Numbered from the stretch's first letter, positions 57,743-63,794 are shown. The stretch: 64,000 bases of DNA from IMGVR_UViG_3300034072_000926:401260-465259; one strand, 5' to 3'. Numbers and translations: made by a program. Notes: a model not told the origin generated them from the sequence alone.

Positions 57743-57879
57743 GTGACGGGCAAGTAATCGCTAATGGAATTTAGCCGGCTGCTCTAACCACCTGAGCTAC
57801 ACCGGGCCCTAAGACCCGATGAAGGGAGTCGAACCCTCGACACGCTGGTTGGGATAACCCATCAACTACGGCCCGTCAC
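57743..57879 (-). ncRNA. Y RNA-like element enclosing a circularly permuted tRNA (AT-CCC-AA loop, U73)
   Basis: GTGACGGGCCG..GGGTTATC / T-arm / acceptor closed by TTAG / D-arm / CTTGCCCGTCAC. Confidence 0.8.
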
Positions 57880-57937
57880 GTGTTCTTGATATGGTAAAAG
57901 GGCACTGTTGTCAAGCGCCCTTTTACCATAATGATTA

Positions 57938-58120
57938 TTAAATGTGGACGCCTGAGAGCAGTCCCGATTTCTGCAATAGAACCAGTAGGGCGATTACACC
58001 CACGACCAGTTTTGCTGGCATGTGGACAGGGGCCGGGAATGCCGAGTCAATGACCCAGAATGCACACCACACGATGGCCACAAAGATAACCAGCATTAGT
58101 AGAAGTGAAATGATATCCAT
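57938..58120 (-). CDS. small two-TM membrane protein
   Basis: 60 aa, two hydrophobic helices, AAGGAG SD. Confidence 0.7.
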   Translation of the reverse strand: MDIISLLLMLVIFVAIVWCAFWVIDSAFPAPVHMPAKLVVGVIALLVLLQKSGLLSGVHI

Positions 58121-58189
58121 GTCTTTTCTCCTTTTTCTGGATACTAATACTTACTAGGATAGGAGCGTGGTTAAACACATGGATCAAAA

Positions 58190-58218
58190 TGGTGCGCGCA
58201 GTGGGGGTCGAACCCACG
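58190..58218 (-). pseudogene. isolated tRNA 3' fragment (T-arm + acceptor strand + CCA)
   Basis: GTGGG-TTCGACC-CCCAC-TGCGCGC-A-CCA without a 5' half. Confidence 0.6.
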
Positions 58219-58224
58219 CTTGAG

Positions 58225-58298
58225 TGTCCCCAGTCGGATTCGAACCGACAACATGCGGGGTTTAAGGCCGCCGACTCTACCAGTTGGCCTATAGGGAC
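58225..58298 (-). tRNA. tRNA-Leu(UAA) with short variable loop
   Basis: GTCCCTA/TGGGGAC, CT-TAA-AC loop, GTCGG-TTCGAAT-CCGAC. Confidence 0.75.
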
Positions 58299-58307
58299 AT
58301 AAGTATT

Positions 58308-58392
58308 TGGTAGGCACGGTGGGACTCGAACCCACACGGATTAACCACACAATTTTAAGTCGTGCGCGTATGACCAATTTCGCCACGTGCCC
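58308..58392 (-). tRNA. tRNA-Leu(UAA)
   Basis: GGGCACG/CGTGCCT, GCG/CGC D-stem, CT-TAA-AA, extended variable region, A73, CCA. Confidence 0.88.
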
Positions 58393-58402
58393 ATGGAGAA
58401 GT

Positions 58403-58978
58403 ATGTCTAAGAACGAAGTGATAAAACAATTCGGCTACACATGTTCAGCTTGTAGCATATCTGAATGGATGGGTAAACCTATTTGTTTAGAGCTTGATCA
58501 CATCGATGGCAATAATCGAAACAATGAATTGTCGAATCTGCGTCTACTCTGTCCCAATTGTCACTCTCAGACAGAGACATTCAGAGGTCGCAATATCAAT
58601 AAAGGTGAGACTAAAGTTTCAGATGAGGATCTAGTCGAGGCTCTGACTTCGACGAAAAACATTCGTCAAGCCCTCATCAAGGTCGGTCTAACACCAAAGG
58701 GTATGAACTATCAGCGAGCTTCAAAACTTCTTAATCATCAATACCAAACGGTAGATAAGAATAATTCGCAATATGGATCAGTTTGGATCCATAATGGAAC
58801 TTCAAATAAGAAGATCAAAGCTGACTTACTTTCAGAATATCTCGAGCAAGGGTGGGTCAAAGGCAGGATCATGCTAACGAAAGCCCCATCACAACGCGGC
58901 AAGTTTTGGGTAACGAACGGTCTTCAAAACCGAATGGTTACTGAGATTCCTGAAGGATGGTGGAAAGGTATGTGTTAA
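58403..58978 (+). CDS. HNH homing endonuclease
   Basis: CSAC..LELDHIDGNNRNNELSNLRLLCPNCHS; inserted antisense next to tRNA-Leu. Confidence 0.9.
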   Translation: MSKNEVIKQFGYTCSACSISEWMGKPICLELDHIDGNNRNNELSNLRLLCPNCHSQTETFRGRNINKGETKVSDEDLVEALTSTKNIRQALIKVGLTPKGMNYQRASKLLNHQYQTVDKNNSQYGSVWIHNGTSNKKIKADLLSEYLEQGWVKGRIMLTKAPSQRGKFWVTNGLQNRMVTEIPEGWWKGMC

Positions 58979-58993
58979 GTCTCTACCTTTGGG

Positions 58994-59425
58994 CTATGCG
59001 CGCTTAACGTCCTCAACGGCTCGACGGAGAATGTCTTCCATCAGCGTATTGAACGTAATATCCCTCTTATGTGCTTCCTTGAATAGAAATAGAAGCAATT
59101 CGTCATCCAGATCGAGAGGTATCTGAACACGGAGATCGAAGGTCTTATTAGCCACGATGGCTTCGGCCTTCTCGACAAAGTCCTCAAGCACGTCAAGCTC
59201 AACAAACTCGATGCTCGTATCTAGCTGATCAGCTACGGCATCCTTATGATCTGGATCAATCCAACGATAAGCGAAGCTACCATGCTCATAATCGGGACGG
59301 GTCACAACAGTTAGGACACGAGTGCCATGACCCTGAACTACTCCGGCGGTCATTCTCGCAGTATCCTGATTCAGACCCTTGCTGGCCTGATCCACATACC
59401 AGTTATAGATTTCTGCTTCGTTCAT
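58994..59425 (-). CDS. hypothetical protein
   Basis: 143-aa ORF, RHH-like C-terminus, TAG stop. Confidence 0.65.
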   Translation of the reverse strand: MNEAEIYNWYVDQASKGLNQDTARMTAGVVQGHGTRVLTVVTRPDYEHGSFAYRWIDPDHKDAVADQLDTSIEFVELDVLEDFVEKAEAIVANKTFDLRVQIPLDLDDELLLFLFKEAHKRDITFNTLMEDILRRAVEDVKRA

Positions 59426-59446
59426 CTTGTTACCTCTTTATCTCAC

Positions 59447-62633: not shown

Positions 62634-62634
62634 G

Positions 62635-62705
62635 TGCTCTGAGAGAGAATCGAACTCTCGTTGGCGGGTTACGAATCCGCTATCTTACCACTAAATGACC
62701 AGAGC
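62635..62705 (-). tRNA. tRNA-Thr(CGU)
   Basis: GCTCTGG/TCAGAGC, TT-CGT-AA loop, GAGAG-TTCGATT-CTCTC. Confidence 0.78.
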
Positions 62706-62710
62706 GTGGT

Positions 62711-62784
62711 TGGTGCCGGCTAAGGGAATCGAACCCTTGATTGATGCTTACAAGGCAACTGTTATACCATTTAACTAAGCCGGC
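62711..62784 (-). tRNA. tRNA-Thr(UGU)
   Basis: GCCGGCT/AGCCGGC, GTTA/TAAC, CT-TGT-AA, A73-CCA. Confidence 0.88.
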
Positions 62785-62789
62785 ATTTT

Positions 62790-62923
62790 CCATAGTTTGT
62801 GATCAGACCAGTGACCGCCACGGTTGAGCGTCTGTCTAGCGTCCTTCGTGTAAAAACTCTAGATACTACTGCCTAAGCGGGTAGCCTAATCCGCCCAGAT
62901 TACTCCGAACGAACCAACTATGG
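62790..62923 (-). ncRNA. candidate structured RNA
   Basis: 8-bp terminal inverted repeat CCATAGTT/AACTATGG; ORF-free; lies between tRNAs. Confidence 0.35.
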
Positions 62924-63017
62924 AAGAAACAAAGAGCCTCGCAGCGCATTACTTCTGTAAACTCTTTGTTTCCGATCTGGACTCTACAGCAGTACATCCG
63001 TGCTGTCAAGTCCATAG

Positions 63018-63086
63018 AGGCCCTGTCGAGACTCGAACTCGACATCAGACGTTCGAAGCGTCCGGGCTAGATCCACTAGCAGGGCC
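63018..63086 (-). tRNA. tRNA-Arg(UCG)-like with shortened D region
   Basis: GGCCCTG/CAGGGCC, GGACG-CT TCG AA-CGTCT, TCGAG/CTCGA; 16 nt between acceptor and anticodon stems. Confidence 0.6.
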
Positions 63087-63087
63087 A

Positions 63088-63378
63088 TTAGATCGCCATG
63101 AACATCATCTTGAAGGTCATAGCGTGTTTCTTCTCAAGAAACCAGATCTCTCTGGTCAGAAGCTCTCGGTCGCAAGTCTTATGCCACCAAGTGTCTCCAC
63201 ATTGCCCGATCATGCGTTCGAACCACTGGAGACTCTCAAGCTTCATATACCGATAGCCTTCGCTCCAGTCCTTCATCGACAACCCTCTGTCGAATTTGTC
63301 GAACGGGTCGAACAACTTGTCGGTCTCTTCCCGGCTGAGCTCGAAGACATAGTCTCCGTTCTCTTCATACATGTTCAT
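63088..63378 (-). CDS. hypothetical protein
   Basis: 96-aa ORF ending KHAMTFKMMF. Confidence 0.65.
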   Translation of the reverse strand: MNMYEENGDYVFELSREETDKLFDPFDKFDRGLSMKDWSEGYRYMKLESLQWFERMIGQCGDTWWHKTCDRELLTREIWFLEKKHAMTFKMMFMAI

Positions 63379-63435
63379 GCTTGCCTCCTGTCAACGACAC
63401 GTTAAACTAGAGGCAAGCATGAAGTCAACACCAGG

Positions 63436-63690
63436 TTATTTGTCAGCGATTGCATCAGTGGTCGCGAAACGCAGAAGCGCAGTCGTGATACCAACAACCG
63501 AGAGCAAAGCACCATAATGGTTTCCGATTACATCCTTCAGGAAAGGCATGTAGAGCTCAACAGCACCAAGAATGGTAACTGCGGTCGAGAACCAAACGGT
63601 CTTGGATTTGCCGGCCTTGAGCAACCAGTCCTTAGCGTTAAAGCCTAGGCTCTTTAGTGCGTCAAGTGCGGGAACAACATTGTAGGCCAT
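63436..63690 (-). CDS. small two-TM protein, possible holin
   Basis: KSKTVWF..two TM helices..LRFAT; TAAATA motif and GGAGATCGG leader upstream. Confidence 0.6.
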   Translation of the reverse strand: MAYNVVPALDALKSLGFNAKDWLLKAGKSKTVWFSTAVTILGAVELYMPFLKDVIGNHYGALLSVVGITTALLRFATTDAIADK

Positions 63691-63732
63691 ATCCGATCTC
63701 CTCTTTGAGTGACCGAATATTTACCAAAAGGT

Positions 63733-63794
63733 AGAGGGCAAGTTGTTTGACCTGGGACATTCTAGCAAAGATAACCCAAGCCTATCGGCCCTCT
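63733..63794 (-). ncRNA. minimal Y RNA-like stem without a tRNA domain
   Basis: AGAGGGCCGATAGGCTTGGGTTATC-13 nt-CCCAGG..CTTGCCCTCT. Confidence 0.7.

What the first reader, a model, noticed from the sequence alone, without database searches (positions are those of the whole stretch)
57743..63794. Family of five phage Y RNA-like genes, four enclosing circularly permuted tRNA domains
Seen: five minus-strand elements (57743-57879, 61463-61706, 61716-61858, 62362-62466, 63733-63794) share 5' G(G/A)GCCG(A)-N7-10-(G/C)GTTATC and 3' CTTGC(C/T)C. Their terminal helices covary (GACGGGC/GCCCGTC, GAGGGC/GCCCTC, GACGAGC/GCTCGTC). Inside four of them tRNA parts occur in the order T-arm, acceptor 3' strand, acceptor 5' strand, D-arm. 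Established: the Ro60-binding helix of Y RNAs has 5' GGUCCGA with a bulged C, 3' UUGAC, and GGGUUAUC in human Y4; bacterial YrlA RNAs carry a permuted tRNA-like module. Inference: this is an expanded phage Y RNA repertoire spanning all stages from bare stem, to YrlA-type, to near-complete permuted tRNA. It could act with a Ro60/Rsr protein (none in this window) as a decoy or tether in tRNA damage and repair conflicts.
Basis: partly seen in the sequence, partly recalled or inferred. Interest (0 to 1): 0.93.

Follow-up and report, generated by a model that had tools for sequence, protein, structure and literature searches.

The report
Five phage Y RNA genes
A 465-kb uncultivated phage carries five small-RNA genes of the Y RNA family, four of them with a built-in tRNA look-alike, scattered through its tRNA gene cluster, and it encodes their expected protein partner, Ro60, far away in the same genome: a real find, but a new member of an already described kind of RNA.

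Summary
Exactly five minus-strand elements share a 5' G(G/A)GCCG...GUUAUC motif, a 3' CUUGC(C/U)C motif and covarying terminal helices. They lie at 57743-57879, 61463-61706, 61716-61858, 62362-62466 and 63733-63794. Four enclose T arm, 7-bp acceptor hairpin and D arm, which is the published YrlA design.

Family evidence:
- An RNA-only pattern found 117 phage stretches, about 60 with a TROVE/Ro60 gene beside them.
- A covariance model trained only on Y RNAs next to phage Ro60 genes finds these five and nothing else (94.6, 86.8, 48.7, 47.8, 27.2 bits).

The window is the end of a 465,259-bp phage contig. That contig does encode a full-length Ro60 (TROVE + vWA), about 330 kb away, between tail genes.

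Phage Y RNAs are already published: mycobacteriophages and Thermus phage phiLo. So is RNase P cleavage with CCA addition of Mycobacterium smegmatis YrlA.

Features I did not find described:
- Y RNA genes unlinked from Ro60 and interleaved with tRNA genes in huge phages, 5-7 copies each.
- Exact 7-bp acceptor stems with a genomically encoded N73-CCA in half of the long loops.
- A class II, tRNA-Leu-like head carrying a 99-nt insert.

Function is inferred, not shown. Interest is moderate.

The parts
57743..57879 (-). Y RNA A (YrlA type): lower stem GUGACGGGC/GCCCGUCAC with a bulged C, upper stem GUUGAUGGG/UCCAUUAGC, UUAUC, T arm, 7-bp acceptor hairpin (loop UCUUAGGG, no CCA), D arm. tRNA-Met follows directly.
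   Evidence: R1 94.2 bits (in the seed). R2 86.8 bits, E 1.6e-17. Rfam RF01656 37.9 bits and YrlA 33.1 bits. Fold z = -3.5.
57886..57914 (-). Promoter-like site for A: TTGACA, 17 nt, TATCAA, ending 6 nt before the first base of the stem.
   Evidence: Read from the sequence. The orthologues of A in L108 and L012 also have TTGACA upstream. The tool's stricter rule (T at position 6 of the second hexamer) does not list it.
61463..61706 (-). Y RNA B: YrlA type with a class II, tRNA-Leu-like head. It has a long variable arm, a GGCGGAAUUGGCAGACGC D arm and acceptor 3' strand CCUCCCC followed by A-CCA. The acceptor loop is interrupted by a 99-nt insert. The ribosome-binding site of the next gene follows directly.
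   Evidence: R1 69.7 bits, E 1e-13. R2 47.8 bits, E 8.5e-9. Orthologues without the insert are 146-154 nt long: L012:6021-6167, L045:2229-2382, L037:8611-8756, L108:7247-7392.
61527..61625 (-). 99-nt insert in the acceptor loop of B, between ACCA and the acceptor 5' strand.
   Evidence: Found only in this phage and its near-identical strains L003 and L004; no other copy in any fetched locus. It contains a weak promoter-like site, AAGACA-18-CATAAT.
61716..61858 (-). Y RNA C (YrlA type): 12-bp lower stem, T arm CUGGG/CCCAG, acceptor UCCCCGC/GCGGGGA with loop U-CCA-UUGU, UCGUCUAGUGGAUAGGAC D arm. Ends in a U run.
   Evidence: R1 119.7 bits (in the seed). R2 94.6 bits, E 2.7e-19. Orthologues in L108, L037, L012 and L045.
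61865..61893 (-). Promoter-like site for C: TTGACA, 17 nt, TATAAA, ending 6 nt before the stem.
   Evidence: The orthologue in L045 also has TTGACA upstream.
62362..62466 (-). Y RNA D (compact YrlA type): GACGAGC/GCUCGUC lower stem, CCGUUAUC, T arm directly after UUAUC, 7-bp acceptor closed by a CACG tetraloop, D arm. tRNA-Arg follows directly.
   Evidence: R1 45.9 bits, E 1.9e-8. R2 48.7 bits, E 5.6e-9. Rfam YrlA 30.4 bits. Neither D nor its orthologue (L012:8037-8148) was in either model's seed.
63733..63794 (-). Y RNA E (short, YrlB-like): lower stem AGAGGGC/GCCCUCU, bulged C, upper stem GGCUUGGG/CCCAGGUC, loop starting UUAUC; no tRNA-like part.
   Evidence: R1 29.3 bits, E 8e-5. R2 27.2 bits, E 3.6e-4. 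Similar short copies sit next to Ro60 in many phages and in Bxz1 (L005:24018-24089).
63802..63830 (-). Promoter-like site for E: TTGACA, 17 nt, TAGATA, ending 7 nt before the stem.

Best explanation
The five elements are phage-encoded Y RNAs. Four are YrlA type, meaning a Ro60-binding stem capped by a tRNA-like domain with no anticodon loop. One is a short YrlB-like stem-loop.

Expression (inferred). They are made from the phage's tRNA/tmRNA cluster. A, C and E each have a promoter-like site placed to start transcription at the stem. B and D lack one and abut neighbouring genes, so they are probably cut out of longer transcripts by the tRNA-processing machinery.

Partner (inferred). They most likely bind the Ro60 protein that this phage encodes elsewhere in its genome. 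Binding would be through the conserved bulged helix, 5' GGGC-C-GA paired with 3' UU-GCCC. The tRNA-like heads would then work as in other Y RNAs: as tethers that couple Ro60 to a host exoribonuclease such as PNPase or to tRNA-binding proteins, and as gates on the Ro60 ring. The result would be altered RNA decay or quality control in the infected cell.

Processing (inferred). The heads of B and C have a 7-bp acceptor stem, a discriminator base, an encoded CCA and U at position -1. They are probably opened by RNase P and 3' trimming, as shown for Mycobacterium smegmatis YrlA, giving two-piece RNAs with a CCA end.

What is shown: sequence and structure membership of the family, association of the family with Ro60 genes, and a Ro60 gene in this genome. 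What is inferred: binding, processing and the downstream function.
For: Membership:
- Model R2 was trained only on 42 Y RNAs lying next to, and on the same strand as, Ro60 genes in other phage contigs, including Bxz1. It finds exactly these five in 64 kb: 94.6, 86.8, 48.7, 47.8 and 27.2 bits, with the next hit at 15 bits.
- R1 gives the same five.

Link to Ro60:
- The RNA-only pattern GGCCG-N7-10-GGTTATC-N3-33-GGTTCGA found 117 phage stretches, about 60 with a TROVE ORF within a few kb.
- Conversely, in 80 phage loci chosen only for Ro60, R1 gives 84 hits in 39 loci. All are on the Ro60 strand and most lie just upstream of the gene.
- R1 finds the two Y RNAs upstream of the Bxz1 Ro-like gene gp220. 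Mycobacteriophages are the published phage case.

Partner in this genome:
- L175:2917-4689 lies on the same contig and has TROVE (1.3e-43) and vWA_Ro60 (5e-51) domains.
- It matches Deinococcus Rsr 2NVO (1e-115), RNA-binding protein RO60 9NEN and Xenopus Ro60 1YVP over its full length.

Structure: 19 of 24 pairs show compensatory changes; covariation score 0.549 against 0.154.

Expression: TTGACA-N17 promoter-like sites abut A, C and E and several orthologues.

Against: - No expression, binding or processing data exist for this uncultivated phage.
- The Y RNA genes are not within 4 kb of Ro60, which is the published genomic criterion. They lie about 330 kb away along the contig, or about 130 kb if the genome is circular. 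No Y RNA was found within 3 kb of the Ro60 gene.
- Rfam YrlA and Y_RNA gathering scores are not reached.
- The exact GNCGAAN0-1G motif is met only by B; A, C, D and E have GCCGU/GCCGAU.
- CCA is not strictly kept among orthologues (CUA or CUC in L108, L037, L045), so it may be a relic of tRNA ancestry.
- The B insert, and the way B abuts the next gene's ribosome-binding site, could mean that B is decaying.
Confidence: 0.85

Rival explanations
1. tRNA decoys that act without Ro60. The anticodon-less tRNA-like heads soak up host tRNA-targeting nucleases or other tRNA-binding defence proteins and so protect the phage's and host's tRNAs. The Y stem serves only to stabilise the RNA.
For: - The genes sit inside tRNA arrays, not beside Ro60.
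- The heads mimic several tRNA types: Leu-like class II, a UCGUCUAG-type D arm, and generic.
- Hughes et al. raise competitive inhibition of an anticodon nuclease as a possible role for YrlA (PMC7790460).
Against: - The Ro60-binding helix and the UUAUC motif are the most conserved parts of all copies.
- Copy E has no tRNA part at all.
- The phage and its relative both keep a full-length Ro60.
- The decoy idea is untested even in Salmonella.
Confidence: 0.2
2. Split, chargeable tRNA mimics. B- and C-type copies are cut at the acceptor loop, end in CCA and are aminoacylated, B for example by LeuRS, which does not read the anticodon. They then act in or on translation.
For: - Exact 7-bp acceptor stems are the rule.
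- N73-CCA starts 9 of 18 long loops in the huge-phage clade against 1 of 17 in Ro60-adjacent phage Y RNAs (Fisher p = 0.007). Chance would give 1/64 per loop.
- A73 is kept in all five B orthologues, and U at -1 in all C orthologues.
- The 99-nt insert is tolerated exactly where excision would occur.
- M. smegmatis YrlA is cleaved and receives CCA in vivo (PMC4201824).
- The phage invests in translation: LysRS, SerRS, tRNAs and a tmRNA-like gene.
Against: - CCA is mutated to CUA or CUC in some orthologues.
- Aminoacylation of a Y RNA has never been shown.
- A and D have closed loops without CCA.
- That LeuRS would accept such a head is my inference from known identity rules.
Confidence: 0.1
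3. Non-functional debris of the tRNA array: junctions of tandem tRNA genes or decaying tRNA pseudogenes that only resemble Y RNAs, or mere processing or terminator punctuation.
For: - tRNA-tRNA junctions do give partial model hits, for example 62676-62738 at 23 bits. Chen et al. warned about this artefact.
- An orphan tRNA 3' fragment exists at 58180-58222.
- C ends in a U run.
Against: - Junction hits match only the T-to-D part of the model; the five elements match end to end, including the Ro60-type stem.
- The stems covary.
- Orthologues persist across related phages of 277-462 kb.
- The elements are 100% identical in strains whose flanking gene content differs.
- The family is statistically tied to Ro60 genes.
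Confidence: 0.03

Closest known systems
YrlA RNAs (Rfam RF02553): Salmonella Typhimurium, Mycobacterium smegmatis and mycobacteriophages (Chen et al. 2014, PMC4201824; structure in bioRxiv 10.1101/312249)
   Same: - A terminal stem carrying the Ro60 motif, capped by T arm, acceptor-like hairpin and D arm in permuted order, with no anticodon loop.
- The 7-bp acceptor stem matches M. smegmatis YrlA, which RNase P cleaves and which then receives CCA.
- R1 detects the YrlA upstream of the Bxz1 Ro-like gene at 65 bits.
   Different: - Not encoded within 4 kb of Ro60; interleaved with tRNA genes instead.
- Four paralogues with different tRNA-type heads, including a class II head with a long variable arm.
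- CCA is written in the gene in B and C.
- Both strands of the Ro60 helix are recognisable, whereas in Salmonella and M. smegmatis only the 5' strand is.
- Rfam score of only 30-33 bits.
YrlB and other short Y RNAs next to Ro60 (Salmonella YrlB; Bxz1 L005:24018-24089)
   Same: Element E is a 62-nt stem, bulge, stem and loop with the same 5' and 3' motifs and no tRNA-like head. Many such short copies lie beside phage Ro60 genes.
   Different: E has its own promoter-like site, follows a tmRNA-like gene and is far from Ro60.
Metazoan Y RNAs and nematode stem-bulge RNAs (Rfam RF00019, RF01656)
   Same: - The lower helix GGGC-C-GA/UU-GCCC differs from GGUC-C-GA/UU-GACC by one compensated base pair.
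- A bulged C, a 3' ACUU internal loop, and an upper stem ending GGG followed by UUAUC, as in human Y4.
- Element A scores 37.9 bits on RF01656 against a gathering score of 38.
   Different: - No match to RF00019 at E <= 10.
- A tRNA-like head replaces the pyrimidine-rich loop.
- No Pol III or La-type context.
- A bacterial-type promoter.
Thermus phage phiLo Ro60 with Yrl1 and Yrl2 (PMC12135203)
   Same: A phage encodes both Ro60 and more than one Y RNA-like RNA. The proposed use is hijacking host PNPase in a Ro60/Y RNA/PNPase complex.
   Different: The phiLo Yrls lie directly upstream of the Ro60 gene and were defined by a CGAA motif. The paper's text makes almost no mention of tRNA (2 occurrences), so I found no sign of a tRNA-like head, but I did not examine the Yrl structures themselves.
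Circularly permuted tRNA genes of Cyanidioschyzon merolae (Soma et al. 2007, as cited in bioRxiv 10.1101/312249)
   Same: The 3' half comes before the 5' half, the acceptor end is closed by an intervening sequence after CCA, and the termini pair with each other.
   Different: There is no anticodon loop and no sign of a splicing motif. The termini form a Ro60-type helix, so no canonical tRNA can result.

Membership tests
Y RNA (Ro60-associated noncoding RNA) | 5' and 3' ends pair into a long stem with a bulged helix carrying the Ro60 contact motif (metazoan GGUCCGA/UUGACC; bacterial GNCGAAN0-1G) | tested here: met
   All five have G(G/A)GC-C-G(A/U) paired with (C)UUGC(C/U)C and a bulged C. The lower stem is paired in 44-46 of 46 family rows at positions 3-9, with 4-5 pair types at the outer positions. 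The exact GNCGAAN0-1G string is met only by B; the family consensus is GGGCCGAAG.
Y RNA (Ro60-associated noncoding RNA) | Physically bound by Ro60/Rsr | not testable with these tools
   Needs pull-down or gel-shift assays. Only the genomic association of the family with Ro60 genes was shown.
Y RNA (Ro60-associated noncoding RNA) | A Ro60 (TROVE + vWA) protein in the same genome | tested here: met
   L175:2917-4689 on the same contig has TROVE and vWA_Ro60 domains and matches 2NVO, 9NEN and 1YVP at E 1e-107 to 1e-115. No TROVE protein is encoded in the window itself.
Bacterial/phage YrlA (Chen et al. 2014 criteria) | Encoded within about 4 kb of the Ro60 gene on the same strand | tested here: not met
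   Same strand, but about 330 kb apart on the contig, or about 130 kb if circular. No model hit within 3 kb of the Ro60 gene. The same unlinked layout occurs in the 462-kb relative (L045/L050 against L168).
Bacterial/phage YrlA (Chen et al. 2014 criteria) | tRNA-like domain: T arm, acceptor-like stem-loop and D arm, in that order, inside the Y stem | tested here: met
   Met for A, B, C and D and not for E, which is YrlB-like. The T, acceptor and D helices covary across the family.
Bacterial/phage YrlA (Chen et al. 2014 criteria) | Reaches the Rfam RF02553 gathering score (69 bits) | tested here: not met
   A scores 33.1 and D 30.4 bits. Ro60-adjacent phage Y RNAs also score only 35-55 bits, so the cut-off does not discriminate for phage members.
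Bacterial/phage YrlA (Chen et al. 2014 criteria) | Significant match to a model built from Ro60-adjacent phage Y RNAs only | tested here: met
   R2: C 94.6, A 86.8, D 48.7, B 47.8 and E 27.2 bits, with E-values from 3e-19 to 4e-4. No other hit exceeds 15.4 bits in 64 kb.
Circularly permuted tRNA gene | Yields a canonical tRNA with an anticodon loop after processing of the paired termini | tested here: not met
   There is no anticodon loop. The anticodon-stem position continues into the Y upper stem and the UUAUC junction. ARAGORN and the Rfam tRNA model do not call any element as a full tRNA; the only overlap is a sub-threshold partial tRNA match inside C (61788-61850, 22.2 bits).
RNase P-processed YrlA (M. 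smegmatis type) | 7-bp acceptor stem; cleavage at +1; CCA at the new 3' end | tested here: inconclusive
   The 7-bp stems and encoded N73-CCA (B, C) are present, and CCA is enriched in the clade: 9 of 18 long loops. Cleavage itself cannot be tested here.

The most novel reading that the evidence does not exclude
In huge phages the Y RNA genes have moved into the tRNA arrays and kept, or regained, full pre-tRNA processing signals: an exact 7-bp acceptor stem, a discriminator base, an encoded CCA and U at position -1. B- and C-type copies would therefore be cut open by RNase P and trimmed to two-piece, CCA-ended tRNA mimics. At least the Leu-like one could then be aminoacylated. That would couple a phage Ro60 particle to synthetases, EF-Tu or the ribosome: a charged Y RNA.
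Probability: 0.1. Interest if true: 0.8.

Novelty: new member of a known kind. Interest (0 to 1): 0.45.

Why it matters
Y RNAs and Ro60 are conserved from bacteria to humans, yet what they do in bacteria and phages is still poorly understood.

Three points matter here:
- Proximity searches miss copies. Looking within about 4 kb of Ro60 misses Y RNA genes altogether in huge phages. There, five to seven paralogues hide among tRNA genes more than 100 kb from Ro60.
- Diverse heads. The tRNA-like heads copy different tRNA classes, and half of the long-looped ones carry an encoded CCA. That makes this phage clade a natural test set for two questions. Do different heads recruit different partners to Ro60? 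Are some Y RNAs processed, or even charged, like tRNAs?
- Annotation tools. The RNA-only pattern and the two covariance models recover Ro60-linked Y RNAs across phages and many bacterial phyla where the Rfam YrlA model falls below its cut-off.

This extends a known system and opens no new one.

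Tried and rejected
- Rfam at gathering thresholds gave only tRNAs. Y_RNA RF00019 gave nothing even at E <= 10. I do not treat this as a refutation, because Ro60-adjacent phage Y RNAs also miss the YrlA cut-off.
- megablast of the region against 50,697 GenBank phages found no relative.
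- A TROVE profile against all six-frame ORFs of the window found nothing, best E 0.35. Pfam on 39 window ORFs (38 distinct ORFs) found no RNA ligase, RtcB, PNPase or CCA-adding enzyme.
- Looking for Y RNAs beside the phage's own Ro60 gene found none within 3 kb, with either Rfam or R1.
- Extending past the window end failed. The window end is the contig end, and three independent assemblies break within about 140 nt of each other. A related contig from the same sample shares a 99.4% identical tmRNA-like gene there. Its upstream junction sequence is not found on our contig. Circularity and further copies beyond the end therefore remain open.
- The 99-nt insert in B has no second copy anywhere.
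- Near-identical strains L003 and L004 gave no covariation information, because all five elements are 100% identical in them.
- Two reviews (PMC10870794, PMC6047535) are not held in the library.
- I avoided typing a hand-made structure string for the upper stem and counted those pairs in a script instead. Support there is moderate: 24-32 of about 37 rows are paired, with A-U/U-A and G-C/C-G swaps.

Full report
**What is there.**

The last 6.3 kb of the window holds a minus-strand tRNA cluster, the 3' part of a tmRNA-like gene and a few small ORFs. Each starts with G(G/A)GCCG, then 7-10 nt, then (G/C)GUUAUC, and each ends with CUUGC(C/U)C.

- The strict motif occurs five times, only here and only on this strand.
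- A looser form gives 6 matches against 0.30 expected; 0 of 100 shuffles reach 6.
- In each element the ends pair into a 7-12-bp lower helix, followed by a bulged C.
- An upper helix differs in sequence in all five copies but stays paired. It ends just before UUAUC.
- A-D then run T arm, acceptor 3' strand, loop, acceptor 5' strand and D arm. The acceptor stem is exactly 7 bp.
- E is a bare 62-nt stem-loop.

**Is it a Y RNA?**

Curated models alone are ambiguous.
- Nothing reaches a gathering score.
- In E-value mode, element A scores 37.9 bits on RF01656, the nematode homologues of Y RNAs (cut-off 38).
- A scores 33.1 bits and D 30.4 bits on YrlA (cut-off 69).

I therefore tested the family link directly, in both directions.

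From the RNA to the protein:
- An RNA-only pattern (GGCCG, gap, GGTTATC, gap, GGTTCGA) was scanned over IMG/VR and returned 117 stretches.
- A TROVE profile finds a Ro60 gene within the few fetched kb in about 60 of them.

From the protein to the RNA:
- I fetched 80 phage loci chosen only because they encode Ro60.
- Model R1, built from 31 pattern-derived sequences, gives 84 hits in 39 of these loci.
- All 84 are on the Ro60 strand and most lie just upstream of the gene. Arrays of three to seven copies are common.
- R1 also finds a YrlA-type and a short Y RNA directly upstream of the Ro-like gene of mycobacteriophage Bxz1. Mycobacteriophages are the published phage case (PMC4201824).

The cleanest test:
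- I built a second model, R2, only from 42 Ro60-adjacent phage Y RNAs.
- In the window it finds exactly the five elements: C 94.6, A 86.8, D 48.7, B 47.8 and E 27.2 bits. Nothing else exceeds 15.4 bits.
- Rfam's YrlA model gives only 35-55 bits even on Ro60-adjacent phage Y RNAs, so its cut-off is simply too strict for phage members.

Structure:
- RNAalifold finds 24 pairs, 19 of them with compensatory changes.
- On 53 sequences, 93.1% of cells are paired against 64.2% in shuffles and 39-46% with slid partners.
- The covariation score is 0.549 against 0.154. The alignment was fitted to the model.

**The partner.**

- The window is the final 64 kb of a 465,259-bp IMG/VR contig and encodes no TROVE protein.
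- A scan with an alignment of 24 phage Ro60 proteins returned the same contig at 126-134 kb.
- The ORF there carries TROVE and Ro60-type vWA domains. It aligns end to end with Deinococcus Rsr, RNA-binding protein RO60 (9NEN) and Xenopus Ro60.
- It lies between tail sheath and tail tube genes, on the same strand as the Y RNAs. No Y RNA lies within 3 kb of it.
- A 462-kb relative shows the same split: Y RNAs at 172-197 kb and Ro60 at about 308 kb. This suggests colinear genomes and a separation of about 130 kb here if the genome is circular.

**Context in relatives.**

- Related contigs of 277-462 kb carry orthologues of A, B, C, D and E-like copies. There are up to seven per 11 kb, interleaved with dense tRNA arrays; one relative has 46 tRNAs.
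- Five is therefore probably a lower bound for this phage, since the contig ends inside the cluster.
- Three of the five copies, and several orthologues, are preceded by TTGACA, 17 nt and a TA-rich hexamer ending 6-7 nt before the stem. Other copies directly abut tRNA genes.
- The five elements are 100% identical in two strain-level relatives from independent samples.

**What is unusual.**

The permuted tRNA-like head is the published YrlA design (PMC4201824; bioRxiv 10.1101/312249). Three features stand out in this clade.

1. The genes are unlinked from Ro60 and embedded in tRNA arrays. The published search criterion was proximity to Ro60.
2. The heads look like pre-tRNAs.
   - Stems are exactly 7 bp.
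   - In 9 of 18 long acceptor loops the loop begins with a discriminator base plus CCA. Ro60-adjacent phage Y RNAs show this in 1 of 17 (Fisher p = 0.007; binomial against chance 2e-12).
   - All C orthologues have U just before the acceptor 5' strand.
   - All B orthologues keep A at the discriminator position.
3. B has a class II, tRNA-Leu-like head with a long variable arm. In this phage lineage alone it also has a unique 99-nt insert, exactly between CCA and the acceptor 5' strand.

CCA is not strictly conserved; some orthologues have CUA or CUC. It may therefore be partly a relic. A simple origin for the permuted layout would be the junction of two tandem copies of one tRNA fused to a Y stem. 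That is my inference.

**Mechanism.**

The best-supported reading is that these RNAs bind the phage Ro60 through the bulged helix and use the tRNA-like heads as tethers or gates.
- This is how Deinococcus and Salmonella Y RNAs work with PNPase (as summarised in bioRxiv 10.1101/312249).
- It is also what the Thermus phage phiLo Ro60-Yrl-PNPase complex suggests (PMC12135203).
- Opening of B and C by RNase P, with a CCA end, is plausible by analogy with M. smegmatis YrlA (PMC4201824).
- A Ro60-independent decoy role against tRNA-cleaving nucleases has been suggested for YrlA (PMC7790460) and cannot be excluded.
- Charging of a processed Leu-like head is the boldest reading that remains open.

None of these functional steps is shown here.

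**Verdict.**

However, it is a new member of a described family, not a new kind of element. Interest is moderate. It rests on the genomic arrangement, the number and diversity of paralogues, and the strongly pre-tRNA-like heads.

Noticed in passing
window 63831-64000 (-); full copy at L108:11069-11255 (-): A short (about 190 nt) tmRNA-like gene, cut about 18 nt from its 5' end by the contig end. A contig of a related phage from the same sample carries a 99.4% identical copy that starts GGGGACG, ends CGUCUCCAC and has a G3:U70 pair. This shared sequence probably explains why three independent assemblies break here.
   Followed up: partly
window 40312-40388 (-) and 60865-60953 (-): Two possible stop-codon suppressor tRNAs: a tRNA with anticodon CUA (Rfam tRNA 62 bits) and a Sec-like tRNA with anticodon UCA (tRNA-Sec 36 bits, below the cut-off of 47). 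Both have counterparts in the 462-kb relative (L050:1481-1554 and 2277-2355). This may point to stop-codon recoding in part of the genome.
   Followed up: no
window 10772-12451 (-) and 47866-49158 (-): The phage encodes two aminoacyl-tRNA synthetases: a class I lysyl-tRNA synthetase (Pfam 5.9e-88) and a seryl-tRNA synthetase.
   Followed up: no
window 62468-62633 (-): The 166-nt spacer between tRNA-Thr and Y RNA D is 78% identical to L045:3213-3372 in the relative, which has no D copy there. It is closed by an 8-bp helix, UGAACCCC/GGGGUUCA. It may be another structured RNA.
   Followed up: partly
window 62925-63009 (-): A near-consensus promoter (TTGACA, 17 nt, TAGAGT) is followed by a 15-bp hairpin, GGAAACAAAGAG.../...CUCUUUGUUUC. 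The promoter part is conserved in L012 and L045. It could be a small RNA or a regulatory hairpin.
   Followed up: no
window 58180-58222 (-): An orphan T arm plus acceptor 3' strand plus ACCA, with no 5' half, directly after a tRNA. It resembles the 3' part of tRNA-Leu genes of the relative L050, so it is probably a tRNA remnant.
   Followed up: partly
window 58307-58978 (+) and 54914-55585 (-): HNH and GIY-YIG (SegE-like) homing-endonuclease genes lie inside the tRNA/Y RNA cluster. They could drive rearrangement of the array.
   Followed up: no
L175:2917-4689 (+) (contig 126-134 kb, outside the window): The phage Ro60 gene sits between tail sheath and tail tube (gp19-like) genes, with a TnsA-like endonuclease gene nearby. 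That is an odd place for an RNA-binding protein gene.
   Followed up: partly
L162, L163, L149, L174 and other Ro60 loci: Many phage Ro60 genes are preceded by arrays of three to seven Y RNA copies, often interleaved with tRNA genes. The papers I read describe at most two per locus.
   Followed up: partly
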